A stretch of DNA of 64,000 nt from Thecamonas trahens ATCC 50062 (taxonomy: Eukaryota; Protista; Apusomonadida). Of the stretch, positions 8,917 to 56,347 are shown one piece after another. Where the stretch lies: the NCBI RefSeq assembly GCF_000142905.1, contig NW_013657672.1:266244-330243 (forward strand), written 5' to 3'. Within the stretch, counting starts at the first letter, position 1. The number at the start of each line of letters is the position of its first letter. The notes under the pieces are model-generated. The model saw only the letters and a program-made list of their open reading frames with translations. It did not search any database and was not told the origin of the DNA. The position numbers and the translations under genes are program-made.

Positions 8917-9353
8917 ACTGCCCCCTCTCGTCCGTGGCAGCCCCACAGGCATGTGAGTCCCACCCCATGGGCAGACTCTCTGTATCCCGCCGTACCCCTC
9001 CACCCCGCGTACACTATCGGGCTCTCTTCCCGTCTACCCCCCCTCACCCCTACCTCACCCCTGCCTCCCCTCCCTACTTTCCCCCTACCTCCCCTCCCTC
9101 CCCTCCCTACTCCCTAACCCCATACCCACACCCTTAATTCGCCCAACCCCCCCCCACACACACCCTAACTCCCTTCTCCTTCTCGTCTTTCCATCCAGAC
9201 ACATACCTGTGTTACAACTGAGAGGGGTGCCCGACTACGTTGCTGTTGATCACCGTTTTCCTCTTCCCTCACCTCAACCGTCTTCGCTTCACCTTCACAC
9301 CTCTTCCCCACTCGCCGTGCACCTCTCTAACCCTCCTCCCCCCTCCTCCCGGC

Positions 9354-12300
9354 ATGGGCTTAAGGTGTAAGGTTGCCTTAAAGACGGTGGCATCAGCTGT
9401 ACTCATTGCTACCCTCGCTGCCTATCTCACCATGGTTGGCCTGTTCCTTGAGGACGGTCACGCCCCGGCCTCGCGCGCCTTGGAGCCAGACATGGAGCCT
9501 GTCGGGTTCTTCTCACCACCTCCGCCCAATTCAGGCATTGCTGGGCACATCTTCGGCCCGAGCTCAGATGGCCTTGTCATTGCTGTTGTTGCGGACATGT
9601 CGGATGGCACAAACGTGCCTACGGTAGAGTTCCGCGCCCCAAATCCCACGTCCGGCGCCCTGTCGTCGTCGGGAGGCGCTGCGGTTCGTGTTGGCTTCAG
9701 ACCGTTGACACCGCTAGCATCGGGGAGTGCTGTGCCGGCGGGCTTTGATCTCCGCGCCGCAGGCTATCTCGACATTGCGCGTACGGTATTTTTGGCAGGT
9801 GTGGATGAGAGTGCTGTCAATCTGGACGATCTTGTTGTCGTCATCGAGTGTCCGCTGGCGACGGCTGCCGCTCCACTGCCCGAGCCACCGACCTCATGCA
9901 CGCTCCGCCGCATTGGCACTAGCGGCGCGTTCCGCTTTGCAAACTCAGCTTCTCCCACGAACGGTGCTATCACGGAGCTGGCTGTTGTCCCTGTTGCCGG
10001 TACATCTGTGGCCAACTCAGGCTTCTTTGTCGTTGGGCTGTTGAACCAAACCGAGCTCGCCATCGCGTCATGTCCGCTCTCTTCAGGCATTTGCTTTCAG
10101 GTTGCAAGTACCATTGTGGGGCCTGTCTCGCCGCTCATCGCCCATGTTGAGCTTGCGCCGTCGAGCATGGGCGTTTTCCTTCGCTCAACGCAGACTCCGT
10201 TCTCCACCACACTGTATCCCTGTGGACTTTCGTCATGCTCCTCATCCGTTAATGTTGGGACGTTCACTTCAGACCAAGTTGCGACCCTGGGAGTTGCTGC
10301 CTGGGTCTCATCTTCCTCGAGCGACTCGATTGTTGTCTTGGTTGACGAGTATGTTCGAGTCTGCATCGGAAGTAATGACTGCAGCTTGTCCGACTCGCTG
10401 CTGTCGTTCGCGCCATCTTCCAAGTCTTCTATCGTGGCGGTAGCGGCTACTCGTGGCGATGTGGGTCCTTGGCTTCCAGGCCTATCAGAAGTCAACTTTT
10501 TTGTGGCTGTCAGCTACTCCTCGCCGGGCAAGCCGCCGTCTCTCTCGTTTTTCTCGGTCTCGTCTGCTTCCCGCTTCCGCCTTGTCCGTCTTGCAATCGC
10601 ATCGCCGACTATGTCATGCCGGGTTGCCGGCCATTGCCTCTCGCTTGGCTATGACCAGGCAAGCGGTCTGCTTCTTGCAGGCTACCCGGAAGTCAGCGGC
10701 GCTTTTGGCATCTCGGGCATCAAGACCTTCAAGTGGCGCCCAAAGGTTGACGTCAATCCGGTCTCGGTCTCGTCTCAGGACCTCGTCATTGCTGTTCAGC
10801 CCAATATGCGCGGTTTTCCCTCGCTCTCGTTTCAGCTTGCCCCTTACACAGCCCTCACCGGGCCGATCACAGTCTCTGACGTACCGTTTACGACTGTACT
10901 CCGTAGCTCGCTCGCCCACGGCGTGTCTGTCGACATTGTCTTGTCCTACCCAGGCTTTTTGCCCGGCGATACTGTCACGCTCGCCTGGCGACTCTCCTCT
11001 GCCATGGCGTCGTTTGAGTCATCATCGTTGGGCTACGAGACTATGACGGTGACGACTCCCGCAACGCCGTACGAGGTTGTCGGCGTGACGGCAAGAACTA
11101 TCCAAGCTGAGTCGATTGATCTGGATTGGACACCTCCCTTTTCACCGGTCAACGATCCAATCACTTCGTACGATGTCATCGCAAAGTCTGCCATTCGTTC
11201 CGGCTCCAACGAGCCGTCGCCGCCGCTCGGCGTCTTGGCGTCGGTGACCGCTCCAGTAGTCTTTCCACTCAGCGTTGCTGTCGAGCCGTCAGTCACCTAC
11301 AGACTCGTGGTTGTTGCATACAACATGGCTGGTGGCTCGCCGACGGGCGGGGAGTTGAGTATCACCACTCCGTGCTCAACGACTGCTCTGCCGAGTGCGC
11401 CGACCATCGGGACGTTTGCCCTCGAGCTCGACATCAGCAGTCTTGCGCTTCGTCTCACGTGGGCCGAGCCGCGCGATGGAGGCTGTGCTCTCGACGTTTA
11501 TCGCATTCTGCTCCACACGCCTAGCGCAAGTCCATTCCCAAGCCCCACTGCTGTGGCGACGGTCTCGGCCAGTGCTGCGCGCACCTTTCTGATTGGAGTT
11601 GACGCGGATCCGCTTGGCGGGAGCGGGACGGTGGCCCTGCTGCCGTCAACTACCTATGCAGTCTCGCTTGAAGCTGTGAACGTTGTAGGAAGTGTCTCGA
11701 CGCTCTCGGGAACTCAAAGTGTAACGACCCCGGCTGTGCCGCTTCCGCCGGCGTCATTTACCGCCACTCCGAGCTCGCCGCAGGAGGTTGGGCTGTCATG
11801 GACTCCGCCAACCGGCTCGGTTAGCGGTGATGTATTCTTGTACACAGTCAAGATTGCCGTCTCGCCTGGTCCGGCAACAGACATCATCTACCAGGGCAGT
11901 GACACCAGCTTTGTCGCCACCGGGCTCACCTCCCAGGTCACCTACGTCTTTGCACTCACCGCAGCCAACGGAATCGGCGCTTCATCGCCGGCCTCGACCG
12001 TGGCTACAACACCCTCGGGCTGTTTTCCCGTCTGCGTTGCCGGCCAAGGCGTGTGCACCTCTACGGCGCCATTCTCCTGCACCTGTAATGCTGGCTTTGC
12101 TGGCACCGACTGCTCAATTGCCTGTACATGCGTCAATGGCGTGTGCGCCGACGGCTCGTCCGGCGATGGAAAGTGTGCTGTAGGCACATGCAGTGCTGGT
12201 TTTGAGGGCGACAACTGCGACACGCCCATTCCGCTGGTCGTTGCCTCATGTACAGGCTGTACGCTCGGGATGGCTGCGGTGGCGTCGCAAGCTATCACGC

Positions 12301-14552
12301 TCTCAGGCACCGGCTTTGATGCTCAGGTTGTGGCGTACCTCAACGACACCCTAGTTCCTACCAGCTATGCTGCTGCAAGCACCCGAGCTGTGGTATTCGA
12401 TCCGCTCATCGCTGCTACAGGCTCACTGATGATGACGTTGCCGGCGGCAACGTCAGCGTCGCTAGGCGCGGCATCCGCCTACGCCAATCTTACTTTGGTC
12501 CATAGCTCGTCTGGCGCAGTTTTGGCATCGCGATCGATTGTGTACTATACCACCTCGTCGTGCACCAGTGAGGGCCAGGTCGACGTCGGCGGTCAGTGCG
12601 TATCGTGTCCCGGAGGCGGAACGTGTCCAGGCGGCTTTCGGATTTGGCCGGCCGAGGGCTACTGGCTCGAGAGCGAGACTGCTGGCCCGGACGCGCTAGT
12701 GACTTGTGAGAACGAGGCGGCGTGCCCCGGCGCTCTCGGAACGAGAACCGGCTATCCAGTCCAGTCGCAGGCGTCCGGTGCGCGAGTTACCGCCGTCTGC
12801 GCCTCGGCCGACGGTTACACCGGTCGCGAGTGCAAGGACTGCCTTGACGGCTTTTACCGCGATCAGCAACAATGCCGGTCGTGCGGGCTCTCGGATGCTG
12901 ACAAGGCTGAGTTCTACCTCCTTCTCATTGTCGTCGTCGTTTTTATGACGCTCATTTCGGCGTCTGTTGCGCTTCTCCCGGACAAGTGGCTCGATCGGTC
13001 CGTAACGGCATTGCTCGGCCTCCAGCAAATCGTCTTTGTCGGGCGTCTCTCGTCGAACGTCATCTCGGGCTCGACCGGTGAGCGCATCGCCAACTTTTCC
13101 GCGGCCTCTCGTTCCTGCTCTTTGACATTGAGTTTGCCAAGCCGACGTGCACCATCGGGAAGATCCCATTTTGGGGCATCTTTGCGGGCACTGTGGTCGT
13201 CCTCATTGGTGCACTTTCGACATTCACTGCTGCCTCGTACATCTTTGCTACCCTTCAGAAGCGAAAGAACCCGAATCTGAGCAAGAGCAAGATGATGTGG
13301 ATTCGCGCCATGCACTCGTGGCTCCTCCTCGGCGCCATTGCTTACCTTCAGTTCAATGTCCGCCTCACACAAGCGCTGTACTGCAAGAAGGAGACTTCGT
13401 CCGACGGCGTCACCTACCGGCTCGACATCGAACCCGACACGGTGTGTTGGACCGGCTCGCACCTATGGGTCACCATCTTTGCCGCCGTCTTTGTGCTCGG
13501 CTACTCGCTCGGCTTTCCCATCTCCATGTTTGTTCTAGTTGCTCGGGCCCACGCCCGCGGTCTTACCCAGTTTGACCGCCACGTCTATGGCTACCTCATC
13601 CGTGGCGTCAAGGACAAGTACTTTTGGTTCCGGTTCATCACCTTTATCATTAACCTCTCGCTTGCCGTCCAGACCACCCTCTTTCCGACGTCGGCGCTCA
13701 AGCTCTTTACCTCGCTCGTCTCGTTCCTCCTCAACATGTTTGTGGTCGGCCTTCTTTGGCCGTTCCGCGATTGGTGGGCAAACTACATCCCCATCGGTGT
13801 CGGTGTCGCCACCTCAGTCCAGATCCTCATTCTTCGTGACAAGCTCTCGACCTCGCTGCAGATTGCCACGCTGGTCCTTATTGCCGTTGTTTACGTGGTG
13901 GTCATCGGGGCACGGACGCGTATCCTCATCCGTCACGGCCGTAAGCATCCGAAGGCCATGAAGGTCCATTTGCTTCGGGCTTTTGCTGCTGTTGCTGCGC
14001 CTGCTGCTGGGCCAAGCGCTGTGTCTACCGTGCCAAGGAGGCCAAGACCGAGCAAATTGTCGACGAGCTTGAAGAGGACGATCTCGACGAGCTGGCCCTC
14101 GCTGACGAGGTTGGACTTGACGACCGGACAGAGCGCGAAGCCAACTTTTTGACAAGGACTTTGTCGAGCGCCCGGTCGTCCCGACCAAGGTCTTGCGCAA
14201 GAAAAAGGTGGCCATCCGCGCCGAGCTCGACGATGCTCAGCTCCGCGACCGTTGGATCCCACCCTCCTCCGACTCGGTTGTCGAGCTCACTTCGGGAGGT
14301 GAGAGTGAGGCGTCGTCACTCGTCGACTCGGCGTCGTCCTCGACTCATGCTGTCGATGCGTTGGCTTCGATGGCCTCGGACATGTCTGACCTTGTCGACG
14401 TGCTGGACGATGTGTATGAGACTCGGCTGCAGACCTCGCGCGCCCGGATCGCTCATCTCCGCCAACAGCTGGCCGACATCCGGGCGGCAAAGGCTCGCCA
14501 ACGGCCACGTCGCGAGCGGCCGCTCCTCTACTCGGACTCATATACTGAGTAG
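9354..14552 (+). CDS. Large receptor-like membrane protein: FN3 repeats, EGF-like, Cys-rich linker, multi-TM domain; three frameshifts (about 13093, 13981, 14146)
   Basis: N-terminal hydrophobic anchor, FN3 motifs (LDWTPP...Y...AYNMAGGS; LSWTPP...GL...Y.F...AANGIGAS), EGF CTCNAGFAGTDC and CPGGFRIWPAEGYW...GYTGRECKDCLDGFY. ORFs 9240-13280, 13193-14152 and 14193-14552 join by adding one T in each of three T runs. Confidence 0.8.
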
Positions 14553-14572: not shown

Positions 14573-16057
14573 TTACTTGGCTTGGTACTGGAAGGCAAGA
14601 AGGCCTGCAGCCGAGATGGAGTCGCCGAGCCCGACCGTCCGCACCGGTGCCTTGCAAACCAGCACCGGTGCGAGTGCGCACTGAGTCTGCGGGTCCAGGG
14701 TAAAGGTTTCCACGCCGCCATCATTGCCAGTGGTGTAGAGGACATCAAAGTGGATAGCAGGGTTGAAGCTGCTGACTGGCTGCGGAGCAAGGCCGCAGGC
14801 CCGAAAGCCGACCGCCAGCGCGCCCGCTGCAGCAGGACCGGCCGGCTCTCCCCAGCTGCTGCCGCGGGTGCACACGACGTGATAGGCGAGCGAGTGAAAA
14901 TGCAGCCTTGTCACAGTGCTTGCGCTACTATCCAAGTGCTGAAACAGGGATGCCAGGGCGCTTTCTACGCCCGCGCGGCTGGGGACGTTGTGCGAGGTGG
15001 CATCGGCAGCAAACAGCGGCTTGGTTCCGTCGAGGCCAAGCGCGGCCACCAGGCCCTCGAGCTCTTGCTCGTTAAATCCGATCGAGTCCACCGCACCGGC
15101 AGTAAGCTCGACGAGCTGCGCCATGTAGGCGCTGTTAGCCATTGACGCCAGCTCGAGGTGGACGCTCGGGCGATACTTGAGCCCTCCTACCGCGGCGGCG
15201 AGCTCGGCCACGACTGCGCTCACCCGCGGCGTCGAGGCCTCCACCGCAAGCGCGTCGAGCAGATGGAAGCCCGATAGGACAACTGTGTCTGGCGCAAAGT
15301 CACCTAGCGCGACATGGAAAGTCTTGGCTCCACGCAGCTCGCCGTTGACCTTGTCGCAGTGCAAGATGAACCGGTTGGCCCGCGGCGGGACGACGCCGGC
15401 CACCTCCACGCCGGCCTTGTACTCAATGATGAGATGGACCTCGTCGGCGGCCTCGGGTGCACCGGCGGCGAGCTCGACCGAGCCCGGTAGGAGCGCGGCC
15501 AGACCCGGTCCGACCGGCCCGCCGAGCAGGATCCTTGCCTCGGGAGCAAAGCCAGCAGCCGCCACCGCCATCAGTGCCGCGTTACCGCCGACGTGCTCCA
15601 CAGACGCATCAGCGGCTGCAGCGTGAGCCACCAGCGCCGCATACAACTCATCGTCCACCACCATCCGCTCGGCAGCCCGCCCGTCGGCGGCAAACAGCCG
15701 GAAGCAGCATAGAACGTCGGCCGGCGTAGCGAGCACCTCGCACGCCGCCTCGCCGCCAAAGCCGTCGCAGGCCGCAGGCTCACCAGCCGGCCCGCCGGGA
15801 CCAAACACACGTCCGGCATCTACCACCAGATCAAGATTGGAGTTGTACGCCAGCGCAATGCCGCGTCCGCGCCCGTTGCCTGCGCTCGTGCCCGCCGCTG
15901 CCTCTAGCGCCGCCGCCAGCGCCGCCGCCTCGGCTCCTTCTGCTTCCCGCACCGCCAGCCGGGCGTTGAGCCACAGGTAAGGGAGGCAGACGGCGAGGGC
16001 TACAACCGTCACCGCCACCCAGCTTTGGGAGTTGCCTTTGCCGCTGCCGCTACCCAT
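14573..16057 (-). CDS. ADPGK: ADP-dependent glucokinase with N-terminal signal anchor
   Basis: AYNSNLD, VGGNAALMA, VHLIIEY, PRANRFI, HLELAS, DSIGFNEQEL, RLHFHSLAYH and PVLVC..PVRTVGLGDSISA motifs. Confidence 0.93.
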   Translation of the reverse strand: MGSGSGKGNSQSWVAVTVVALAVCLPYLWLNARLAVREAEGAEAAALAAALEAAAGTSAGNGRGRGIALAYNSNLDLVVDAGRVFGPGGPAGEPAACDGFGGEAACEVLATPADVLCCFRLFAADGRAAERMVVDDELYAALVAHAAAADASVEHVGGNAALMAVAAAGFAPEARILLGGPVGPGLAALLPGSVELAAGAPEAADEVHLIIEYKAGVEVAGVVPPRANRFILHCDKVNGELRGAKTFHVALGDFAPDTVVLSGFHLLDALAVEASTPRVSAVVAELAAAVGGLKYRPSVHLELASMANSAYMAQLVELTAGAVDSIGFNEQELEGLVAALGLDGTKPLFAADATSHNVPSRAGVESALASLFQHLDSSASTVTRLHFHSLAYHVVCTRGSSWGEPAGPAAAGALAVGFRACGLAPQPVSSFNPAIHFDVLYTTGNDGGVETFTLDPQTQCALAPVLVCKAPVRTVGLGDSISAAGLLAFQYQAK

Positions 16058-16229
16058 GCCTCTTCCGTTGCCGTCTCCGATGTGATAGCCTCTGCACCGC
16101 CACAGTAGAGTGTGTCGAGTCCAACGAGTCTGCGGGGCCGCGCCCAGAGGCTTTGCTTCCGAGCCCTTCCACCCATCGCTCGTAGCGCAAGTATGAGCCG
16201 CGCGACCATAGCGGGCCGATCTGGGCCGC

Positions 16230-16545
16230 AAGCGCCACCCTGAGCCCACCCAACCACCGCCGCCGTGTCACCGGCTTGCCCTTCATCGACAAGGACTGCG
16301 TACGGCGACGCCTGAACTGCCTTGGCAGTCATGCCTCGCGCCGATTGCGGCGCAAGCTCATGGCCAAGCACTGCGCTCACCAACGCTTCCAGCACGTTCG
16401 CTTGCTCCTTGGCCGCATCCAGCATCACCTCGGCGCCGATGGGAAAGTCGCGCTCCAACTTGTGCGGATGGAGGATGACGTCGACTTCATCCATGATCAG
16501 CACTCCGCTGCGCCACAGCTCCACTATCCGGCGTGCGCCCAAGCT
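16230..16545 (-). pseudogene. Fragment resembling a DUF3638-type domain
   Basis: GVLIMDEVDVILHPHKLERDFPIG resembles the recalled DUF3638 consensus DEVDLILHPLKSELNFPIG. There is no ATG start, and the piece is far shorter than the very large intact proteins of that family. Confidence 0.5.
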
Positions 16546-19760: not shown

Positions 19761-19960
19761 CTGTCTCATGAACTCTTGCTCGCCCTGCGGACACACTGCC
19801 TGCTTGAATCGCCGTGCCCCGTTTGCTCAGTACCGAGACGCCACCACCGTCAACCCCCCCACCCCCCCTCGGCCACGTGCACCCACCACCACCCCTCCCC
19901 TCCCCCCCCCCCTCCCCCCCCCTCCCCCTCCCTTGCGGGAGCTCGTGCCACATCGCCACC

Positions 19961-21364
19961 ATGCCTGTCCTCGAGTCCATGGTGCAGTTCTTCACACTGC
20001 CCGAGTACTCGCGTGAGTACGAGTACTCGGAAGACTACCTCAAGGCTGGCTACGTGTTCTCGATCGTGCTCGACGTCATGTTCTACATTTTCTACTCGGC
20101 CACTGAGTCGCGTTGTACCATGCCCAATCGGTACCTGCTGGTTGATCCGCTGCTGGTTGCCGAGCCCGAGCTCTGCGCCAACACCACGGCAGCAGCGGCG
20201 GCGGCCGTCTCGCAGATCTCACTCCTCGACAACCTCGACATCGACTACGTCAACCTGATGTGTGGCCAGGAGATCAAGACCCGGTTTGCCTCGTACCATG
20301 TTTCCACACTCGTCTACCTTGTCATCACCGTGACTCTTCTCCGCACTACCTATCTGCTCATGGGCCGCATGCACAAGATCGTCCACCGCATCACCAAGGC
20401 CGACGACGCCCTCCCGGCTCAGCTGATGCAGTCGTACTCAGAGTCGATGGCCGTCATTGCTGACCGGTTCATCAAGGCCAAGTTCATTGGACTTGGCGTC
20501 GTCCTGCTCATGGTAATCTTTGAGGCCGTCTTTGTCTTTGATGAGGCATACAACGCCCGCGACTGGCTCGACGCCTACCGCTGCGTCGACACCAAGGCGT
20601 GGATGGAGGCGCTTGCCTTTCACCCGATCACCTTCCGGTGCGCCACTACACTCTCATTTTACAACACCTTTTTCCGCATTTGCTCGGCCGGCGTCCGCCT
20701 CGTCGTCATGCTCTGCATTGGCTACTCTATCCGAGATCTGTCAGCCTACAAGCGTGGCAAAGTGTGGATCGACATTGAGCTCGAGAAAGCGGCCCAGCCG
20801 GACAACGACTCGCTCAAGGGCACCATTCGCTCCGCTCTGGGCGAGCTGACCAAGGCTCCTGCGAGCTCGGCCTGCTCGCCAAGCACGAGCACCCCGATTC
20901 CTGCGCTCTGCGTCGGGAGCCCGAGCTCCAACGACGATCTGCCCATGACTCCTTTGTCTGGCGGCCTCGACTCTCGTTTTGCTGCAGTTGTAGACGAGAC
21001 TCTCGACAGCCGCCACCGCCGCAAGCTCTTCCGCGACAGCCTGGTACAGGCCTTCAAAGCCCTTGCCATGCACCTCACTCACGGCGATGCACTCCCGCAC
21101 GAGATCACCGTCGCCGAGTACATCCGCGGCGGCATGTCACGTGTCGGCGAAGGGCCCGAGTCGTTTGCCGAGCCAGCCTTCAACTCTGCGCTCGAGGCTG
21201 GCCTCACCGCCCTGGAGAACGGCTTTGAGCAGATCCGGACCCGCCGACGTCGTCGTCGCGAGTCGTCTGCCAACGACGCCGAGCCCCGCCTCTCCTCCTC
21301 GTCGTTCTCGTCGTTTTCTGACGGGCGCGAGCCCGGCAACGCCGCTACCTACTTTGTCGAGTAG
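19961..21364 (+). CDS. Four-TM protein resembling the pannexin/innexin/LRRC8 pore domain
   Basis: Four hydrophobic segments with paired extracellular Cys: SRCTMP and DYVNLMC in loop 1, YRCVD and FRCATTL in loop 2. Kozak-like gccaccATG at 19961. Confidence 0.7.
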   Translation: MPVLESMVQFFTLPEYSREYEYSEDYLKAGYVFSIVLDVMFYIFYSATESRCTMPNRYLLVDPLLVAEPELCANTTAAAAAAVSQISLLDNLDIDYVNLMCGQEIKTRFASYHVSTLVYLVITVTLLRTTYLLMGRMHKIVHRITKADDALPAQLMQSYSESMAVIADRFIKAKFIGLGVVLLMVIFEAVFVFDEAYNARDWLDAYRCVDTKAWMEALAFHPITFRCATTLSFYNTFFRICSAGVRLVVMLCIGYSIRDLSAYKRGKVWIDIELEKAAQPDNDSLKGTIRSALGELTKAPASSACSPSTSTPIPALCVGSPSSNDDLPMTPLSGGLDSRFAAVVDETLDSRHRRKLFRDSLVQAFKALAMHLTHGDALPHEITVAEYIRGGMSRVGEGPESFAEPAFNSALEAGLTALENGFEQIRTRRRRRRESSANDAEPRLSSSSFSSFSDGREPGNAATYFVE

Positions 21365-21387
21365 ACCGTAAGCCTGTGGGCCGTTGT

Positions 21388-24300
21388 TCACCGTGGTTGC
21401 CCATGAAGGTACGCGACTGACCGCGAGCCCCTGACATTTCTGCGCTTTGAGTCTGACTGCTGCGAGCCCAGGAGCTGACCGGTTGAGCGCTCAGGCCGAG
21501 CTTGCATGCCCAAGCGTCGGTTTCGGCGTGTCTGCCTGCGCTTGCGCTGGTTGCGGAGATCGCGGCCCGCCGCAAACGCGTCTGAGCTCTGCTCGCTTTC
21601 ATCAAGCGAGCGCTCGTTGGCGAGGTCCAACGATGAGAGCGAGTGGCCGGCTAACCTAAAGTTGGTTGTCGGAGACTTGACCAGCTGGTTGCGCGTTGGC
21701 AAAGGCGTATTGCTGTCCTTGGCATCTCCCAAGGCCGACACCGAGCTCGTAGAGCTCGAGCTGTCCGTGCTGCACGAGTCGCTTGTAAACAGACTGATCG
21801 GCGAGTCGAGTGCCACGCCAGGCGTCGCTGGCTCGACAGCCGTCTGGCGCGTCCGCGACCGATACAAGGTGCGCACAATGAGGACCGCAGCGATGATGGC
21901 GAGGACAAGAGCCTGGAAGCCAGCACCAACGCCAAAGAGCGTCACATTCTCGCGATACAGAAAGTACAGGATCTGCGCGGAAGATGCCATGCCCGATGCG
22001 AGTGCGAGGCCGGTGTGTAGCCGCTCGAGGAACGGATCCAGGACTCCGACCAAGAGCAGCGAGACGCCAAAGTTGAAACAGGCGGCAAAGACGCGCGCGC
22101 TCGGCGATGCCACAAAAACGGTCTCGAGCACAAACGTGAGCGTCGTGGCCAATGTCAGTGTCCGGAACCACAGGTACTTGGGTTTGAGGCCGCGGATGAT
22201 GTAGCCGTAGGCTTCGATGGCGGCGTCGATGGGCATGCCTGCGAGCACACGCTTTCGGGTTCGCAGTGCCACAAGAAGCGCCGCAACCGGAAAGCCAAGC
22301 GAGAACAAGAGAGCAGTGGCAAAGATACCCGGCGCAAACCTGGAATGACTGCCTTCAAAGCACCGCAGCCGCAGCTCGATCGCAAGCCGCAGGCTGCCGT
22401 CACCGGCCCGTACGCAGTTGAGGGCCTGAAACGTCCGCAACGAGACTTGCAGAAAGACGAGCGAAGCGAGAATGATGAGTGCGTGCATGGTGCGGGCACG
22501 GATGACAGTGCCAAAGTCAAAGGCGCGCGCAGCCGCGGTGGCCTTGCCACGCGCAGCTCGCGCAGCCAACACGGTACGCAGCCAGACTGTGACAAGAAAG
22601 GCAAAGGCAGCGACAAGTGTGAGGCCAAGGGTGCCCAGCCAGAGCGAGAGAAAGGCGACGCGCGGGATAGAGCAGCCCGGGCGGACAACTTCGATCTCAA
22701 AGTTGACCAGCGCAACAAAGCGCATGATGCGCGCGAGTGTCTGCACGCTTGACGACGATGACGTCGCCAGCCGCTGCATCCCAAGCTTTCCCACCACCAC
22801 CAGCGTCTGCAGCGTAACAATGGCCGAGACGACCGTCACAAGGTGGCGGACCGAGAGGAGGAGGAGCGCGAGCAGGATGACGCCAAACATGACCGAGGCC
22901 ACAATGACGATGGCGGCAAGCTCGGCCTTTGCAGCTGCATCTGAGCCGCACGTTCGGCACACGCCATCCTGCATGTAGTACCCGTCGGCGCAGACCGAGC
23001 AATACTCATCGGTGTAGCCGAGCGCGCACTGGTCGGTCTTGCGCGAGCCATCGATGTTGACTAAAGCCGGATACACGCTCACCTCGCCCAGAGCGCCGGG
23101 GCACGCGGCCTCGACAAAACACCGCGACGGCGGCTCCCGTTCTGACGCCGCCCAGTATCCGGTCCGAGGCCAGAACCGCTCGCCGCCAGGACAGTGCGCG
23201 CCTTCAAACTCGGAGCACGGCTTGCATTCGAGCGAGCGCCACACAAAGCCCGGCGCGATGCATCCGTGCGAGACGTAGTCGAGGAGGCCTGGCAGCCGAG
23301 TCGTCACGTCGCCACTGCCGTCGCTGTTGGCAAGCGAGCGGACAACGCTGATGACGTGCGGGCCGGTGGCGTTGGATGCCGGCGTGGTAAACACGAGCGA
23401 GGCGGGCGAGATGAAACTTGCCGAAACAGCAACTGGAGCGCGGAGCTCGCTTGTCGAAGTCGCCACGTCAACGACAACCTCAAAGCTGTCAAAGCCAGCA
23501 AAAAACTCGGCATCGGCATAAGTGAGCGTCATGCGGACACCACCGGCTTGTGACGACGTTGACGGGATGAGTGACCAGGTGGCAGGCATAAGAGCGGCGG
23601 CGGCAAGAGGTGGTGGCGGCGGCGGAGGCGGGGATGGTGGTGGCGGAGGCGGGGATGGTGGCGGTGGTGGTGCTGGCGGCGGCGGCGATGGTGATGGCGG
23701 CGGTGGTGGTGACATTGGTGGTGGCGGTGGCGGAAAGACACACGGGCTATCGACGTCGCCCTGTGGTGCAGAGTGAAACCAGACCACGACGTTGGTAGCG
23801 CTGTTCGAGCTGGAGTAGCCAACAACATCTAGCAGGGCATCGCCGTTGATATCAGCCAGCTCGACCACGTTGGCAGTCGTGTCGGCTGTAGAAAGCGTGG
23901 TGACCAGCGAGTAGCCTGTTGCGCCGGTCGACTCGAAGTACATGATGCCATTTGTGGGCGCGGCGGAGATAGAGACAAAGATGTCAGGGCGGTTGTCATG
24001 GTTGACGTCGCCAGTCCGCCCGACAAAGTGTTTGTGACCCGCGTTGTAAAGCAAAGTTGCGGACCACGACGTCATGGTGCGCGCCGAGCCCGGACCCGGG
24101 TTGTACAGCACGTTGACCGCGTTGTAACCAAACTGCAAGATATCAATGTGGCCGTCGAGATCGAGATCATCAGCCCACACGCCGTAACCAGGAAACACCG
24201 CGTTTGTGAACGAGAGTTGGCCAGTCCACAACGTGCCGGCGCCCCGTTGTTGAAGAATACCACGACTTTGCTGTTGTACGAGCCGACGAGCAGGTCGAAC

Positions 24301-41973: not shown

Positions 41974-44277
41974 CTACAGAAATGGGTTGATGGGAGAGTC
42001 GCGGAGTGGTTGGCCAGCAGGGTCTGTGACAGGGTCAGCGGGGTCAGAATCAGCGGGATCGGAATCAGCTGGTGATGACGAGCCTCCGACGACGTTTGGG
42101 CCCGCGTTGGCGGCGTTGTCAGCGTCGTCAACGGGGTCTACAGCAGGAGTAGAGGCAGGAGCAGGAGCAGGAGCAGGAGCAGTAGTATCTGTACCAGCGG
42201 TTGTTCCTGTGGCAGTGGAGGAGGCGGCGGCGGGATCGGTGTCCGAATCGGTCGAGCCGGCGGTGCCAAACAAGGCGTTCGGCGAGTCAGCGATAGGATC
42301 CGAAGTGTGGAAGATGTTGATGCCACGGGTGAGGTGGGTCCGGGCCGAGTAGAGGACTCGGGCGCGCTCGAGAGCGTACTTGGAGCGGGGAGTGAAGGAG
42401 ACGGCCTGGAGCTGGACGGCAAGGCCGGCGAGGAGGCCCTGGCGCTCGCGAGCGGCGCGGATGGTGCGCGAGACGGTCTTGACGAGGGCGTCGCGAACGT
42501 CAAAGACCCTGTCGCGGTTGTAGCGGGCAAGAGCGGTGGCTGTAGCATCTGTGGCAGCCTCCAGCTGTGACTCTGCATTCTGCCGGGTGGCCTGGGCGTC
42601 GCGGAGCGCGTCGCGTGCAGCGACAATGGCGTCGTTATCGCCCGACTTTGCAAAGAGCTTGTCGTACTTGGCTTGCTTGGAAGCAACGGCCGAGTCGGCC
42701 TTGCGGAGGGCAGTCGATGCGTGCATACGCGGAGTGAGTGCGTGAGTGACTGAGCGGGTGAGACCTGAGTACTCACCGAGCTCGAGCTCGAAGAACAGCT
42801 GCGAGGCGAGAAGGTGGGTCTCGACGACGGCGGTGAAGTCTGTGCTACGGACAAGGTCGCCGATGTCGGGCACAATGGCCGGCGGAAGCGCGGAAATGCT
42901 GGAGAGTACAGCTGCGGTCTTGTCAAGGGTGAGGATGGTCTTGCGCGAGAGCGAGTCAATCTTGTCGAGGGCGGCGCGGATGGTCTTGATACCTTTGCCA
43001 AAGGCGATAGCAGCATCGAGATCTAATGCAAAGCGGCCGTCGAGGTCCTTGGCCGGCTTGTACTTGACGCGCTTGTGCTTCTCGATGGCCTCCATCGAGG
43101 TAAGGAAGCGGACGAGAATGGGGTTCGCGGCGAGATCCGGATGAGCGGCGAGGCGGCGGAGGTACGACTCGTACGAAGCCTGCAGGAACTGCGAGTTGCC
43201 AAAGGCCAGCGCCTCCTTGGACGGGAGAGCAGGGTGAACGATGTACGGAAAGTCGGCCTTGAGCTCGTCGTGAAGCCACTCAAAGTTGTTGGCGACGCGC
43301 GAGACGGTGAACTCGACCATGCCGTGAGTTCGTGACTGGGCCGGCAGCCTGTCGCGATAGACCGGCAATGAGGTGACAGTAGCAATGGTGAAGATGAGAT
43401 CCTTCTTCTTCTCAACCTGAGTCACACCCGAGACCGAAATGAGGACGGTGGGGTTGGTTTTGGACACAACGTTGGCGCGGCGGAGCTGGGCCGAGACAGT
43501 GGCGGGCCTTTCGGGCAGCGGCTCGGTCTCGGGAATGTCAGCGGCACGGATGCCGACCGACGGCGAGACTGGGACGGAAGCCGATGGCGAGGGTGGCGAT
43601 GCCGAGCGTACCGGCGAGGCCGCTAGATTCCTGAGCGCCGAAATCCAGTTGTTTCGGGCGCCGTCCGAGTCGGCCACAAACAGGAACTCGGTGAGGCTGC
43701 CAGACGACGACGGGTTGGGAGCCCGGATGGCAAAGGCGAGCGAGCCGTCGTCGGCCGACGCTGGCGAGGCATCGAGGGTGGCGCTGGAGAGGTCGAGAAC
43801 GTGAGCAGGCTTCTTGGCCTTGGCATTCTTGTATACAAGCAGCATCTGCGGCGCAGGAGGCGATTCACGGAGCGCGAGCACAAATCGCGAGCTGAACGAT
43901 GACATGAACTTGTGGCCTTTCTTCACACTCAGCTTGCCCCACATAGCGGCTGATGTTAGGACGTTGGTGGCTGGCGTGGAAGCAATGGATTCGATGGTGT
44001 AAGCAGCAGCGACCGCACTATCGGCATCTCCAGCCGGGTCGGCATCTTCAGCCGGGTCGGCATCTCCAGCCGGGTCGGCATCTCCAGTCGGGTCGGCATC
44101 TTCAGCCGGGGCGGCATCTTCAGCCGGGTCAGCATCTCCAGCCGGGTCGGCATCTTCAGCCGGGGCGGCATCTCCAGCCGGGTCGGCATCTCCAGCATTC
44201 CCAGAATTCACAACGTCTTCAACGACTTCATAGCCCTTCGCAGGCACAAGGACCTCGTGACCAGCATCGTCCGCCAT
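41974..44277 (-). CDS. Sorting nexin-like protein: PH, PX and BAR domains with a C-terminal NPF motif
   Basis: PH: GKLSVKKG...FLFVADSDGARNNWISAL. PX: VSR..NNFEWLHDEL...HPALP...YLRRLAAHPDL...FL. Followed by a helical BAR-like region and ending INPFL. Confidence 0.82.
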   Translation of the reverse strand: MADDAGHEVLVPAKGYEVVEDVVNSGNAGDADPAGDAAPAEDADPAGDADPAEDAAPAEDADPTGDADPAGDADPAEDADPAGDADSAVAAAYTIESIASTPATNVLTSAAMWGKLSVKKGHKFMSSFSSRFVLALRESPPAPQMLLVYKNAKAKKPAHVLDLSSATLDASPASADDGSLAFAIRAPNPSSSGSLTEFLFVADSDGARNNWISALRNLAASPVRSASPPSPSASVPVSPSVGIRAADIPETEPLPERPATVSAQLRRANVVSKTNPTVLISVSGVTQVEKKKDLIFTIATVTSLPVYRDRLPAQSRTHGMVEFTVSRVANNFEWLHDELKADFPYIVHPALPSKEALAFGNSQFLQASYESYLRRLAAHPDLAANPILVRFLTSMEAIEKHKRVKYKPAKDLDGRFALDLDAAIAFGKGIKTIRAALDKIDSLSRKTILTLDKTAAVLSSISALPPAIVPDIGDLVRSTDFTAVVETHLLASQLFFELELGEYSGLTRSVTHALTPRMHASTALRKADSAVASKQAKYDKLFAKSGDNDAIVAARDALRDAQATRQNAESQLEAATDATATALARYNRDRVFDVRDALVKTVSRTIRAARERQGLLAGLAVQLQAVSFTPRSKYALERARVLYSARTHLTRGINIFHTSDPIADSPNALFGTAGSTDSDTDPAAASSTATGTTAGTDTTAPAPAPAPASTPAVDPVDDADNAANAGPNVVGGSSSPADSDPADSDPADPVTDPAGQPLRDSPINPFL
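44021..44195 (-). repeat. 18-bp coding minisatellite (ADPAGD/ADPAED), about x10
   Basis: Repeated ggcatct(c/t)cagccggg(t/g)c units. Confidence 0.93.
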
Positions 44278-44576
44278 GACCGACCACAAGACAGGCAAGG
44301 AGCAAGCACACACACACACACACAAACACACAGAGAAAGTGGGTCCTTATACTCCCGCCACCAGTACGTCCACTCTTGCCTTCAGAGTCCAACGAGTCGG
44401 GTGGTTGCTACTCTAGCGGTCTGGCGGGCCTTGTCTCCTCGCAGGCGGTGGCGATCGTGTGGGCGGTAGCGATCACAGGCGGTGGCGATCGCACGGGCGG
44501 TGGCGATCGCGCGGGCGGTGGCGGCCACCACCTTTCCCCTCGCCCACCTCTCCCTCCCCTTCCCTTTGCCACTACC

Positions 44577-45098
44577 ATGACCACCCCGGCTACTCCTACC
44601 TCCACCTCTCCTGTCGACGAGCTGCAAAGCCACCTGGCTACCCTGCACCAGGTCATGGCCACGGCTGTCCACGCTCTGGCCACGCACGCCCCTCCGATGG
44701 CCTTTGACTCGCCGGGCGCCACAACGCTGGAGGATGGGGGGTCCTCTTCTTCTTCTGCTGCTGCTGCTGGTGGTGATGGTGGTCCTGCTCCTGCTGGAAG
44801 TGCTGATCCAGCGGGCCAAGCTGTTTCTCCCGAAGTCCAGCACATCATCACCGATCAGGTGGGAATGCTGACAAAGGCTGTCGAAGGTCTCCGCGCTGCC
44901 ATCGGAGAGCTCGGCCCGCTGGCAATCGACCCGGAAGAGCTGGACGCTTCCATCGAGGCATTGCAGGCAGAAGCTAATGACGCTACCCTCAAACTCATGG
45001 CCGAAGCCGATGCCTTTCGCGCTTGGTCGCACTCGGTCGAGGCTTCGCTTGCCCCAGACGCTCTTGATCTCGGCCCGCACCCGCCCACCGACGCATAG
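44577..45098 (+). CDS. MED21: Mediator subunit MED21 (Srb7)-like
   Basis: VDELQSHL..L...M..AV.AL...APP..F, then a helix ending in I.ELG and IEALQAEANDA..KL, matching the MED21 layout. Confidence 0.7.
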   Translation: MTTPATPTSTSPVDELQSHLATLHQVMATAVHALATHAPPMAFDSPGATTLEDGGSSSSSAAAAGGDGGPAPAGSADPAGQAVSPEVQHIITDQVGMLTKAVEGLRAAIGELGPLAIDPEELDASIEALQAEANDATLKLMAEADAFRAWSHSVEASLAPDALDLGPHPPTDA

Positions 45099-45357
45099 CT
45101 CCGTCCTGCCGTGCCCGCGCTTGCCCGCCGCTCCTGCTCGCCCCACACCCTCTCCCCCAGATTCTGCACTGCAGCAGGTCTCACCCCATCATAACATCCC
45201 TAAGCCGAGCTTGACTCTGATCTGATCCCGCATCCCCCCCCTCCCCCCCCACACACCCGAGTCGCCCTTGTCACCTCAGGCCCAGGCCCAGGCCCAGGCC
45301 CAGGTCCGACCCCACTCCCAGACGCCTCCACCGCACTCCCCGCCCCCATCCCCGACC

Positions 45358-46610
45358 ATGGCCAATGCGGTCCCCAACTCCACCCTCTACGTCAACAACC
45401 TCAACGAGAAGGTCAAACTANNNNNNNNNNNNNNNNNNNNNNNNNNNNNNNNNNNNNNNNNNNNNNNNNNNNNNNNNNNNNNNNNNNNNNNNNNNNNNNN
45501 NNNNNNNNNNNNNNNNNNNNNNNNNNNNNNNNNNNNNNNNNNNNNNNNNNNNNNNNNNNNNNNNNNNNNNNNNNNNNNNNNNNNNNNNNNNNNNNNNNNN
45601 NNNNNNNNNNNNNNNNNNNNNNNNNNNNNNNNNNNNNNNNNNNNNNNNNNNNNNNNNNNNNNNNNNNNNNNNNNNNNNNNNNNNNNNNNNNNNNNNNNNN
45701 NNNNNNNNNNNNNNNNNNNNNNNNNNNNNNNNNNNNNNNNNNNNNNNNNNNNNNNNNNNNNNNNNNNNNNNNNNNNNNNNNNNNNNNNNNNNNNNNNNNN
45801 NNNNNNNNNNNNCTCATTTATCTGCAAACTGCCAGGGTACGTCCCTTCCCCACCCCCACCCCCCCCCCCCTCCTCCCCCGTGCCCCCCCCTCCCTGGCCC
45901 CCCATCCCCCCTCCCCTCCTCCACCCCCCCCCCCTCCTCCTCCCTCTACTACCACTACCACTACCACAGAACTGAAGGAGAGCCTCTACGAAGCATTTGC
46001 GCCATACGGGTCTGTGCTCGAGGTGGCGGCCAAGAAGTCGCTTCGAATGCGTGGGCAGGCCTTTGTCACCTTTGCCACGGTGGTGCAGGCGACTCAGGCC
46101 ATGCAGAAGATGCAGGGATCGGTCTTCTTTGACAAGCCCATGCACATCGCATACGCAAAGGACAAGTCGGACGCTGCCGCAAAGGCAGAAGGCAACCTGG
46201 AGGCTCATCAGGAGGCCCGCAAGAAGCGCAAGGCCGAGGCCGAGGCTGCCGCTGCTGGCCAGATGCCCGAGAGCGAGGAAAACCCGGCGGCAAAGCGCCA
46301 GCACCGCTCCATGGCCGACTCGGAGGCCCCGGCCGCGGCCTCGGAGGCCTCGGCGCCGGTGGCGGGCTCGCTCATGCCGTCGCAGACGCTGCTGCTGCAG
46401 GATCTGCCTCAGGCGTGTGACACGGACATGCTCACCACCCTCTTCTGGCAGTTCCCGGGCTTCAAGACCGTCACCCTCCCGCCTGGTGACCGCCGCGTTG
46501 CCTTCGTCGAGTTTGAGGACGTTGCCCAGGCCTCAGTCGCACACACCTCTATGCAGGGCTTTGACCTGCAGGGCTCCAAGCTTGCTGTTACCTTTGCTCA
46601 CTCGGCCTAG
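45358..46610 (+). CDS. U1A/U2B'' (SNF) snRNP protein; intron spans an N-gap, exon 2 from 45970
   Basis: PNSTLYVNNLNEKVK ... ELKESLY..F..YG.VLEV.A.KSLRMRGQAFV.F, plus a second RRM (LF.QFPGFK.V...VAFVEF). Confidence 0.93.
45421..45812. other. Assembly gap (others at 56593-57251, 59556-59686, 61014-61269)
   Basis: Runs of N, mostly next to poly-C tracts or a repeated coding unit. Confidence 1.
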
Positions 46611-55239: not shown

Positions 55240-56307
55240 ATGAGCAGCGGGATGTCATCCCGTGAACGACGAGCTGCCCGTGACGTGGTTGGCTCTCGCA
55301 TGAAGATGTATGAGGTACGTGTTGTGGACATGGTTCGGGAAGTGGGGGGGAGGGGAGGGGAGGCGAGGCGAGGAGGAGGAGGGGCTGGTGGTGGAGGGCG
55401 AGGGAGAGGCAGGCGTTCACTTCGACGACTTCGATGGACGACTGATGGGAATGGAAAGGGAATGGAAGGATAGTCTGCGACCAAGGTGACGCTTGATCCG
55501 ACGCAGCCGTGGATGGTCCGTGCAGATGGTCACAGCTTCTCCAAGTTTACCAAGGGTCTGGTCAAGCCGTTTGACTCGCGGCTGTCAGCGGTGATGGTGG
55601 CGACCATGCTCGACACGGTGGCCAAGTTCAACGCCCTCACAGGATACACACACTCGGACGAGATCACTCTGGTCTTTGGACCGGCCGACGTCGAAGCCGG
55701 GCAGACGCTGGCGTACAACGGAAAGGTATCGAAGATCGTCTCGCTTGTCGCCGCGTACATCTCTGTCCGGTTCAACGCACACATGCTCGCCTACGACTGG
55801 TCCGATCTGAGCGAAACCACCCGAGTCGGGATCCTTGCCTGCGAGGCGCACTTTGATGCCCGCGCCTTCTCGGTTCCACACGCTGCCGAGGCGTGGGCCA
55901 ATCTGTTGTGGCGATCGAACCACGACTGCCGCCGGAACTCGGTCTCGATGCTCGCGCGGGTCTACTACTCGGCCAAGCAGCTGCACGGCATATCAACCCG
56001 CGACGTCCTCGCCATGCTCGAGGATGAGCACGGAGTGGCGTGGGAGGCCCAGCCGCGGTTCTTCACCCGCGGTACCGTGGCCAAGAAGGAGCTATACGAC
56101 ATGGCCGCCATCGATCGCAAGACCGGCGAGGCCGTCGTCGCCAAGCGCTCGCGCTTTGTCGCCCGCGCCTTTCCGCTCAGTGATGACTCGTCTGCCGCCA
56201 TGGCCGATCTTGTCCTCGCCAAGTACTGGCCTGACGACTTTGATCCACAGCGCGCCACCGTTGTCGACGCTGCCTCCATCGCCGCCTCGGGCTTTGTCCC
56301 TGCCTGA
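55240..56307 (+). CDS. Thg1-like protein (TLP; tRNA-His guanylyltransferase family 3'-5' polymerase); intron at 55315-55473
   Basis: RMKMYE | ...VRADGHSFSKFTKG..KPFD, YTHSDEI, NGKVSKIVS, FDAR and WR...DCRRNSVS motifs. Confidence 0.92.
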
Positions 56308-56347
56308 TGGCGTTGCATAGTAAAGGCCAGCACACTTCTCGCACACC

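What the first reader, a model, noticed from the sequence alone, without database searches (positions are those of the whole stretch)
19961..21364. Candidate pannexin/innexin/LRRC8-type large-pore channel in an apparently unicellular, non-animal genome
Seen: 4 TM segments, a short N-terminus (MPVLESMVQFF), loop 1 with 'SRCTMP' and 'LDIDYVNLMCGQEIKTRFASY', TM3 preceded by 'DRFIKAKF', and loop 2 with 'YRCVD' and 'TFRCATTLSFYNTF'. Known: LRRC8/pannexin/innexin subunits have 4 TMs and two conserved Cys per extracellular loop. As I recall them, the LRRC8A motifs are MICLP, YNYVDAVCYE...FAKY, VDCTVD and YRCAHPLA, which line up in the same order. Inference: an LRR-less, possibly pre-metazoan member of the large-pore family with its own cytoplasmic tail, perhaps an ATP-release or volume-regulated channel. 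This bears on the origin of gap-junction and VRAC proteins.
Basis: partly seen in the sequence, partly recalled or inferred. Interest (0 to 1): 0.88.

Follow-up and report, generated by a model that had tools for sequence, protein, structure and literature searches.

The report
Pannexin-like four-helix membrane protein in Thecamonas
A real, intron-less gene of the marine protist Thecamonas trahens encodes a four-pass membrane protein with the loop cysteines and layout of animal pannexin/innexin/LRRC8 channels; kinship is suggested by protein-language-model and predicted-fold searches but not by any sequence-profile test, so a pre-animal origin of these channels is plausible and not yet shown.

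Summary
Window 19961-21364 (+) is an intact 467-aa ORF, letter for letter a public protein record, and every quoted motif is present. The genome is Thecamonas trahens ATCC 50062, an apusomonad and not an animal.

The protein belongs to a tiny family: three paralogs in this genome and two environmental relatives. All share:
- four hydrophobic segments
- a conserved short N-terminus
- two conserved Cys in each outer loop, and none in the inner loops
- an N-glycosylation sequon in loop 1
- positive charge on the inner side

For a link to pannexin/innexin/LRRC8:
- ESM Atlas features put the window protein (0.92) and a 20%-identical paralog (0.88) next to Innexin/Pannexin_like clusters.
- The Atlas model's nearest folds are LRRC8 and pannexin.

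Against it:
- There is no Pfam or PDB hit by HMMER, whether whole protein, pieces or profile.
- Foldseek gives nothing significant.
- The loops are not modelled.

Verdict: probably (about 0.5) an LRR-less, pre-metazoan relative of large-pore channels. Membership is unproven. The scan flagged a similar candidate on another piece of this genome (s1-744732).

The parts
19961..21364 (+). Complete intron-less CDS (467 aa plus TAG stop) of the pannexin-like 4-TM protein
   Evidence: ORF list. ATG context and stop codon. Identical to public protein P0005. 47%-identical homologue P0002 at E 1.5e-94.
19860..19960 (+). 5' flank: a C/T-rich low-complexity tract followed by the Kozak-like GCCACC before the ATG. 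The upstream M1 aminopeptidase gene ends at 19760.
   Evidence: Sequence read. The tract attracts unrelated metatranscriptome contigs.
19964..20044 (+). Short cytoplasmic N-terminus (aa 2-28), with a predicted helix at aa 2-11 and family-invariant P14, Y22 and E24
   Evidence: AF2 secondary structure H2-11. Invariant columns.
20045..20104 (+). TM1 (aa 29-48), with a conserved acidic residue in mid-helix (D38; E in the paralogs)
   Evidence: Hydropathy. Alignment. AF2 helix 25-47 at pLDDT 73-87.
20105..20296 (+). Outer loop 1 (aa 49-112): conserved C52 and C101, extra C72, N74-T-T sequon, and the D-Y-V-N-x-x-C-x-Q-E-I-K helix leading into TM2
   Evidence: Cys and sequon positions. Conservation. 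Low-confidence region of the model.
20297..20368 (+). TM2 (aa 113-136)
   Evidence: Hydropathy. AF2 helix 94-146 at pLDDT 78-86.
20369..20476 (+). Inner loop (aa 137-172): Cys-free and K/R-rich, ending in the invariant R-F-x-x-x-K (F170, K174) before TM3. Paralog L003 carries a roughly 100-aa insertion here.
20477..20542 (+). TM3 (aa 173-194)
   Evidence: Strongest hydrophobic segment, 2.74. AF2 helix 153-207 at pLDDT 80-89.
20543..20662 (+). Outer loop 2 (aa 195-234), with conserved C208 and C227 spaced 19-20 residues apart in all four full-length members
20663..20731 (+). TM4 (aa 235-257), followed by the conserved basic Y-K-R-x-x-x-W
   Evidence: AF2 helix 222-266.
20732..21361 (+). Cytoplasmic tail (aa 258-467): a basic juxtamembrane helix, a Ser/Pro-rich linker (about aa 297-339), a helical region (about aa 340-440) conserved with P0002, a poly-Arg/Ser stretch and a terminal Y-F-V-E
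   Evidence: Alignment. Single-sequence AF2 secondary structure. No Pfam domain and no LRR.

Best explanation
The gene encodes a subunit of a plasma-membrane channel built like animal pannexin/LRRC8/innexin large-pore channels. It is most likely a very distant, LRR-less relative of them kept in the apusomonad Thecamonas trahens, which has three paralogs.

Shown:
- It is a conserved 4-TM protein with a short conserved N-terminus.
- Two loops carry all the conserved Cys (2 + 2) and a conserved glycosylation sequon.
- The remaining loops are Cys-free and basic.

Inferred:
- Both termini face the cytoplasm.
- The two outer loops are tied together by two disulfides (C52-C227 and C101-C208, by analogy with Panx1 C66-C267 and C84-C248) into a small extracellular cap.
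- Six to eight subunits form a ring. TM1, the N-terminal helix and the loop-1 helix line a wide pore that passes ions and small organic solutes such as osmolytes and nucleotides.
- The long cytoplasmic tail regulates gating.
- In a wall-less marine and estuarine flagellate, the likeliest uses are volume regulation and solute or nucleotide release.
For: Gene and family:
- The ORF is intact and identical to a public record.
- Homologues were found at E 1.5e-94 and 2.4e-11.
- There are three paralogs in the genome. hhalign between the two subfamilies gives probability 98.2%, E 4.7e-14.

Topology:
- Every member has four hydrophobic segments.
- Cys occurs only in loops 1 and 2.
- Loop 1 carries a sequon in all five members.
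- K/R are enriched in the inner loop and after TM4.
- The loop-2 Cys spacing of 19-20 equals the C248-C267 spacing of Panx1 quoted in PMC7108861.

Link to large-pore channels:
- ESM Atlas features score 0.92 with 197/256 shared. The reported top hits carry Innexin or Innexin plus Pannexin_like (29 of the 30 hits share the Innexin set), and the ten best share one family or clan.
- The 20%-identical paralog returns the same three clusters at 0.88 with 183-185 shared.
- The Atlas model's nearest folds are LRRC8 (TM 0.42-0.44 by a 467-aa query, 250-263 aligned) and pannexin (TM 0.53 by the target).
Against: - No sequence-level signal exists. Pfam gives nothing at E <= 10 for any family member.
- PF12534 and PF00876 do not ring in the genome.
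- PDB chains of LRRC8, PANX and INX are not hit by the whole protein, three pieces or two profiles.
- Foldseek finds nothing at E <= 0.001 in PDB or BFVD.
- The extracellular loops, the most diagnostic part, have pLDDT below 50.
- The ESM feature and structure searches count as one source, and shuffled proteins reach 0.9 in 4-10% of cases. The paralog's recognition value is low.
- The innexin YYQWV motif is absent.
- Oligomerisation is untested (one search gave no verdict).
- There is no functional or clear expression evidence.
Confidence: 0.5

Rival explanations
1. It is a lineage-restricted 4-TM, Cys-loop glycoprotein that only resembles large-pore channels by convergence. It would work as a membrane organiser, adhesion or receptor-type protein, in the manner of tetraspanins, claudins, MS4A or sarcospan, and not as a pore.
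For: - No profile or Foldseek match to any channel family was found.
- The family is tiny and seen only in Thecamonas-like organisms.
Against: - The language-model neighbours are reported as Innexin/Pannexin_like for two divergent paralogs.
- The Atlas fold neighbours are LRRC8 and pannexin, with one connexin-like row.
- LRRC8 and PANX give alignments about 30-70 residues longer than the small 4-TM scaffolds.
- The N-terminus is conserved across paralogs that are 20% identical.
- The claudin W/GLW motif, the tetraspanin CCG motif and the connexin 3+3 Cys spacing are absent from the sequence.
Confidence: 0.33
2. It is a pore-forming 4-TM channel, but of independent origin or closer to another large-pore lineage (connexin-like or CALHM-like), so it says nothing about the ancestry of pannexins, innexins or LRRC8.
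For: - Large-pore families are known to share topology with little or no sequence similarity (PMC7108861; PMC10400985).
Against: - The Cys pattern is 2 + 2, not the connexin 3 + 3.
- No connexin or CALHM Pfam hit appears at E <= 10.
- Feature neighbours are Innexin/Pannexin_like, not Connexin.
- Connexin alignments are shorter, at 154-192 aa.
Confidence: 0.12
3. It is not a functional gene: a chance ORF in GC-rich DNA, or contaminating animal DNA.
For: GC-rich genomes give many long spurious ORFs, and several overlap this locus in other frames.
Against: - Homologues at 47% and 28% identity, and two paralogs, keep the same motifs.
- The gene lies inside a 609-kb contig of a compact, 63% GC protist genome, between ordinary genes.
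- DNA runs of the same organism hold it without differences.
Confidence: 0.02

Closest known systems
Pannexins (PANX1-3; Pfam Innexin PF00876)
   Same: - Four TM segments, with a cytoplasmic N-terminus and a long regulatory C-terminal tail.
- Two Cys in each outer loop. The loop-2 spacing of 19 equals Panx1 C248-C267.
- A helix in loop 1 that carries the second Cys.
- No LRR domain, and a similar size (about 430 aa against 467).
   Different: - No HMMER-detectable similarity.
- Loop 1 is much longer (64 aa, with C52 and C101 49 residues apart) and carries a third Cys.
- The host is not an animal.
- The heptameric assembly and C-tail plug are untested.
LRRC8A-E / VRAC (Pfam Pannexin_like PF12534)
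   Same: - A short conserved N-terminus and a long loop 1 with a glycosylation sequon.
   Different: - No leucine-rich-repeat domain and no PF12534 hit.
- LRRC8A has three disulfides in its cap (PMC6395065), whereas only two Cys pairs are conserved here.
- By my recollection of Abascal and Zardoya 2012 (cited but not read here), LRRC8 is restricted to chordates.
Innexins (invertebrate gap-junction proteins, INX-6)
   Same: Four TM segments and 2 + 2 loop Cys. Clusters that carry the Innexin Pfam family are the top ESM feature neighbours.
   Different: - The YYQWV signature is absent (motif quoted in PMC10400985).
- INX-6 is not among the top 50 VIA rows.
- A free-living flagellate gives no reason to expect cell-cell junctions.
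Unnexins (Unx1 of Trypanosoma cruzi and other kinetoplastids)
   Same: A protist 4-TM protein proposed, and for Unx1 shown, to form a large-pore channel permeable to dyes and Ca2+ (PMC10400985).
   Different: - Unx1 has no extracellular Cys and is reported to share no relevant sequence homology with innexins or pannexins.
- The exhaustive phmmer search found only three relatives of the Thecamonas protein.
- The supergroup differs (Discoba against Obazoa).

Membership tests
Pannexin/innexin/LRRC8 superfamily (Pfam PF00876 Innexin, PF12534 Pannexin_like) | Match to the family HMM at or above the curated cut-off | tested here: not met
   hmmscan at E <= 10 gives no such hit for the protein or for any of six family members. 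PF12534 and PF00876 searched against the whole genome give nothing at E <= 10.
Pannexin/innexin/LRRC8 superfamily | Detectable sequence similarity to solved members (LRRC8A, PANX1-3, INX-6) | tested here: not met
   phmmer of the whole protein, phmmer of three motif-bearing pieces, and hmmsearch with profiles A1 and A3 against all PDB chain sequences list no large-pore channel at E <= 10.
Pannexin/innexin/LRRC8 superfamily | Four TM helices with the N- and C-termini in the cytoplasm | tested here: met
   - Every member has four hydrophobic segments.
- K/R are enriched in the inner loop and after TM4.
- The N-x-S/T sequon and all conserved Cys lie in the other two loops.
- AF2 gives four long helices at pLDDT 73-89.
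This is at prediction level only.
Pannexin/innexin/LRRC8 superfamily | Two conserved Cys in each extracellular loop | tested here: met
   C52 and C101 are invariant in all members. C208 and C227 are invariant in all four full-length members. The inner loops are Cys-free, and L003 has only these four Cys.
Pannexin/innexin/LRRC8 superfamily | Loops 1 and 2 joined by disulfides into a beta-strand/helix cap (Panx1 C66-C267 and C84-C248, PMC7108861) | tested here: inconclusive
   Loop residues 53-91 and 206-221 have pLDDT below 50 in the AF2 model, and no coordinates were available to measure Cys-Cys distances.
Pannexin/innexin/LRRC8 superfamily | Protomer fold superposes on solved members clearly above background | tested here: inconclusive
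   - Foldseek gives nothing at E <= 0.001.
- The ESM Atlas model's nearest neighbours are LRRC8 and pannexin, at TM 0.42-0.53.
Pannexin/innexin/LRRC8 superfamily | Assembly into a ring of 6-8 subunits around a wide pore | not testable with these tools
   A trimer job returned 'no answer' (score 0.01). Full rings exceed the size limit.
LRRC8 proper | C-terminal leucine-rich-repeat domain | tested here: not met
   No LRR family appears at E <= 10. The tail is a Ser/Pro linker plus helices.
Innexin proper | YYQWV signature, quoted in PMC10400985 | tested here: not met
   The motif is absent from the translation and from the family alignment.
Connexin | Three conserved Cys in each extracellular loop | tested here: not met
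   Only 2 + 2 Cys are conserved. The third loop-1 Cys (C72) is confined to one subfamily.
Unnexin (kinetoplastid) | Sequence similarity to T. cruzi Unx1, with no extracellular Cys | tested here: not met
   The exhaustive phmmer search over 1.84 billion representatives returned only three relatives. This family has loop Cys, whereas Unx1 is reported to have none.

The most novel reading that the evidence does not exclude
The pannexin/innexin/LRRC8 channel superfamily predates animals. Thecamonas trahens, from the sister lineage of Opisthokonta, keeps three LRR-less paralogs of an ancestral Cys-loop large-pore channel that fungi and the sampled unicellular holozoans lost. Large-pore solute and ATP release channels would then have been a unicellular invention, later co-opted for gap junctions and VRAC.
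Probability: 0.45. Interest if true: 0.85.

Novelty: new variant of a known kind. Interest (0 to 1): 0.66.

Why it matters
Reviews and database surveys state that innexins/pannexins and connexins have no homologues outside Metazoa (PMC9750855; PMC6391747). The only protist large-pore proteins described, the kinetoplastid unnexins, lack the loop cysteines and any relevant sequence similarity (PMC10400985).

This would be a family in an apusomonad that keeps the 2 + 2 Cys signature, the topology and a predicted LRRC8/pannexin-like protomer. It would move the origin of this channel architecture below the animal root. It would also give a simple, intron-less, LRR-less subunit for structural and electrophysiological work, and make the question 'what were these channels for before multicellularity?' testable. 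If the resemblance is convergent, it is still a clean example of the same solution evolving again.

Tried and rejected
Searches for more relatives:
- Word-index homologue searches with the protein, with A1 and with the TM-only A3 found only the paralog AMSG_09137 and a fragment of the protein itself.
- Two metagenome-contig scans found no relative. The first attempt failed for lack of a conserved stretch.

Structure and complex jobs:
- Single-sequence AlphaFold gave pLDDT 43, which is unusable.
- Foldseek against PDB and BFVD gave no significant match.
- The 'atlas' fold library was not available.
- Complex prediction with three copies of aa 1-290 returned no answer (score 0.01). It counts neither for nor against binding.

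The profile-profile test:
- A profile-profile test against LRRC8, pannexin or innexin could not be run, because no tool supplies reference sequences. A PDB chain id is not accepted by protein comparison.
- I tried to fetch viral innexins by scanning viral contigs for a YYQWVxFxL pattern. The next gave 17 hits, all in short, evidently random ORFs.

Expression:
- Laid reads show identical 154- and 161-nt contigs at 21249-21444 in two marine metatranscriptomes. They overlap the expected 3' end of the convergent neighbour and could be DNA carry-over, so expression is not shown.
- The many hits at 19892-19932 are a C-rich low-complexity artefact.

Rejected readings:
- Unnexin: it lacks the loop Cys, and no similarity was found.
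- Animal contamination: the gene lies on a 609-kb contig of a compact 63% GC genome, and a paralog is named as Thecamonas.

Full report
**1. The observation**

- The frame is open from 19814 to 21364 on the + strand.
- The first ATG, at 19961, sits in GCCACCATGC, 200 bp after the stop of the upstream gene and just after a C/T-rich tract. The stop is TAG at 21362-21364.
- The 467-aa translation is identical to a protein held by NCBI, UniRef and EukProt, on a 609-kb contig (P0005).
- A hydropathy scan gives four hydrophobic segments, at about aa 29-48, 113-136, 173-194 and 235-257.
- One correction: loop 1 holds three Cys (52, 72, 101), of which two are conserved. Loop 2 holds C208 and C227.

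**2. Whose genome**

- The window is 59-68% GC, apart from two low-GC islands, and is densely packed with long intron-less ORFs.
- The genome is 28.7 Mb in 131 contigs.
- A paralog on contig C45 is the public protein 'AMSG_09137 [Thecamonas trahens ATCC 50062]', identical except for a 40-aa stretch that the public model removes as an intron.
- The host is therefore the marine apusomonad Thecamonas trahens, a unicellular lineage generally placed as sister to Opisthokonta (my own knowledge).
- Sequencing runs that hold the stretch are from one organism plus marine and estuary metagenomes.

**3. The family**

- An exhaustive phmmer search over 1.84 billion representatives found only three proteins:
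  - a fragment of the same protein (97% identical);
  - P0002, a 605-aa environmental protein (47% identical, E 1.5e-94);
  - P0003, a 241-aa truncated call (28% identical, E 2.4e-11).
- Searching the genome itself found two more copies: L002 (644 aa) and L003 (565 aa from its likely ATG). A family profile finds exactly these three and no others.
- hhalign between the window subfamily and the L002/L003 pair gives probability 98.2%, E 4.7e-14, over 222 columns. The three are true paralogs despite about 20% identity.
- Word-index searches and two metagenome scans added nothing.

**4. What is conserved**

- A short N-terminus, M-x-x-x-L-x-x-x-V-x-x-F-x-x-P, followed by Y22-x-E24.
- An acidic residue in mid-TM1.
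- A Cys directly after TM1 (C52).
- An N-x-S/T sequon in loop 1 of all five sequences.
- A [DE]-[YF]-[VL]-[NQ]-x-x-C-x-x-[EQ]-[IFL]-[KH] element that carries C101 and runs into TM2.
- A Cys-free inner loop ending in R-F-x-x-x-K before TM3.
- Two loop-2 Cys spaced 19-20 residues apart.
- TM4, followed by the basic Y-x-R-x-x-x-W.
- Cys is absent from the N-terminus, the inner loop and the juxtamembrane tail in every member. L003 has only the four conserved Cys in 565 residues.
- K/R density is highest in the inner loop and after TM4.

Together these argue for N- and C-termini inside and two disulfide-bonded, glycosylated loops outside. This is inference from sequence rules, not experiment.

**5. 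Tests of kinship with large-pore channels: negative results**

- Pfam shows nothing relevant at E <= 10 for the protein or for any of six relatives.
- The Pannexin_like and Innexin HMMs find nothing in the whole genome.
- phmmer and hmmsearch against PDB chain sequences found no large-pore channel. Those chains include LRRC8A and PANX1, as searches show.
It could not be checked directly, because no tool supplied an LRRC8 sequence.
- An attempt to obtain viral innexins by pattern scan gave only random hits.

**6. Tests of kinship: positive or neutral results**

ESM Atlas features:
- The window protein scores 0.92, with 197 of 256 features shared, against clusters that carry Innexin/Pannexin_like. 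The ten best hits are all in one family or clan.
- The tool's own calibration says 9 in 10 true family members share at least 170 features, against 1-2 in 10 chance hits.
- It also says shuffled proteins reach 0.9 in 4-10% of cases.
- Paralog L002, 20% identical, returns the same three clusters at 0.88 with 183-185 shared, though with a low recognition value.

ESM Atlas fold neighbours:
- The Atlas's own model of the protein has LRRC8 clusters as nearest folds: TM 0.42-0.44 normalised by the whole 467 aa, with 250-263 residues aligned.
- A pannexin cluster follows, at TM 0.53 by the target.

My AlphaFold model:
- The model covers aa 1-290 and used the five-sequence alignment. It reached pLDDT 67 and pTM 0.58, with TM helices at 73-89 but both outer loops below 50.
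- Foldseek found nothing significant in PDB or BFVD.
- The exhaustive VIA search put these in the top ranks, among the longest of the top-ranked alignments:
- A trimer complex job gave no verdict.

**7. Reading**

- The architecture is that of the pannexin/LRRC8/innexin group, as described for Panx1 and LRRC8A (PMC7108861; PMC6395065):
  - 4 TM segments;
  - a conserved short N-terminus;
  - 2 + 2 loop Cys, with pannexin-like spacing in loop 2;
  - a Cys-bearing helix entering TM2;
  - a glycosylated outer loop;
  - a long regulatory tail.
- Known members of this group are themselves only about 15% identical to each other. Failure of HMMER is therefore expected for a pre-metazoan relative and does not exclude homology. 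Equally, nothing here proves it.
- I put about 0.5 on a true, distant large-pore channel relative that forms an oligomeric pore.
- I put about 0.33 on a convergent non-channel 4-TM glycoprotein.
- I put about 0.12 on a channel of another or independent lineage.
- It is not an LRRC8 (no LRR), not an innexin sensu stricto (no YYQWV), not a connexin (no 3 + 3 Cys) and not an unnexin (those lack loop Cys).

**8. Novelty**

- The literature held here says innexins/pannexins and connexins have not been found outside animals.
- No paper joins Thecamonas with pannexin, and the one joining it with innexin is about muscle evolution.
- The paralog's public name is 'uncharacterized protein'.
- The same scan flagged a similar candidate on another piece of this genome (s1-744732). 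It is probably one of the paralogs. It is not independent evidence.

**9. Expression**

- DNA-type runs of the organism hold the gene without differences.
- Two marine metatranscriptomes hold identical 154-161-nt contigs across the stop codon, at 21249-21444. These overlap the 3' end of the convergent neighbour and may be DNA, so transcription is not shown.

Noticed in passing
window 21388-24231 (-): A 947-aa ORF convergent with the channel-like gene; the two stop codons are 24 bp apart. It has FG-GAP_3 repeats (Pfam, E 1.4e-11), a long Pro/Ser tract, a Cys-rich region and several hydrophobic segments. This is an integrin-alpha-like repeat on a multi-pass membrane protein.
   Followed up: partly
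L004:2004-2396 (+) (ENA metagenome contig holding the 47%-identical homologue): 107 bp downstream of the homologue lies a 130-aa ORF with a Tae4 domain (type VI secretion amidase effector 4; E 3.6e-21), on a 59% GC, apparently eukaryotic contig. This query found no counterpart in the Thecamonas genome.
   Followed up: partly
window 21350-21361; L002 C-terminus; P0002 internal: A Y-F-V-[DE] motif recurs at or near the C-terminus of the window protein, of paralog L002 and of P0002. It may be a short linear motif for sorting or phosphotyrosine binding.
   Followed up: no
L002 (G000:C45), aa 596-635 of the ORF: The public model AMSG_09137 removes a 40-aa His/Ser-rich, in-frame stretch as an intron, although the ORF reads through it without a stop. 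Either reading is possible.
   Followed up: partly
window 9240-13280 (+) and 14573-16249 (-): A 1346-aa ORF with fibronectin type III and stabilin-type EGF domains, and an ADP-dependent glucokinase/phosphofructokinase family gene.
   Followed up: partly
window 44001-46000 and 56001-58000: Two low-GC islands (0.52 and 0.47, against about 0.63 elsewhere). The second has long ORFs open in several frames on both strands. An 18-bp tandem array lies at 44021-44196. No Rfam family was found there.
   Followed up: partly
window 19860-19935: A C-rich low-complexity tract just upstream of the ATG matches thousands of unrelated metatranscriptome contigs. It inflates k-mer based 'RNA holder' counts for this locus.
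   Followed up: yes
P0003 (Logan contig, 241 aa): The environmental homologue is truncated. It carries an in-frame insert before the second loop-1 Cys that looks like a retained intron, and a separate 517-aa gene call follows 60 bp later. That organism probably has introns in this gene.
   Followed up: no
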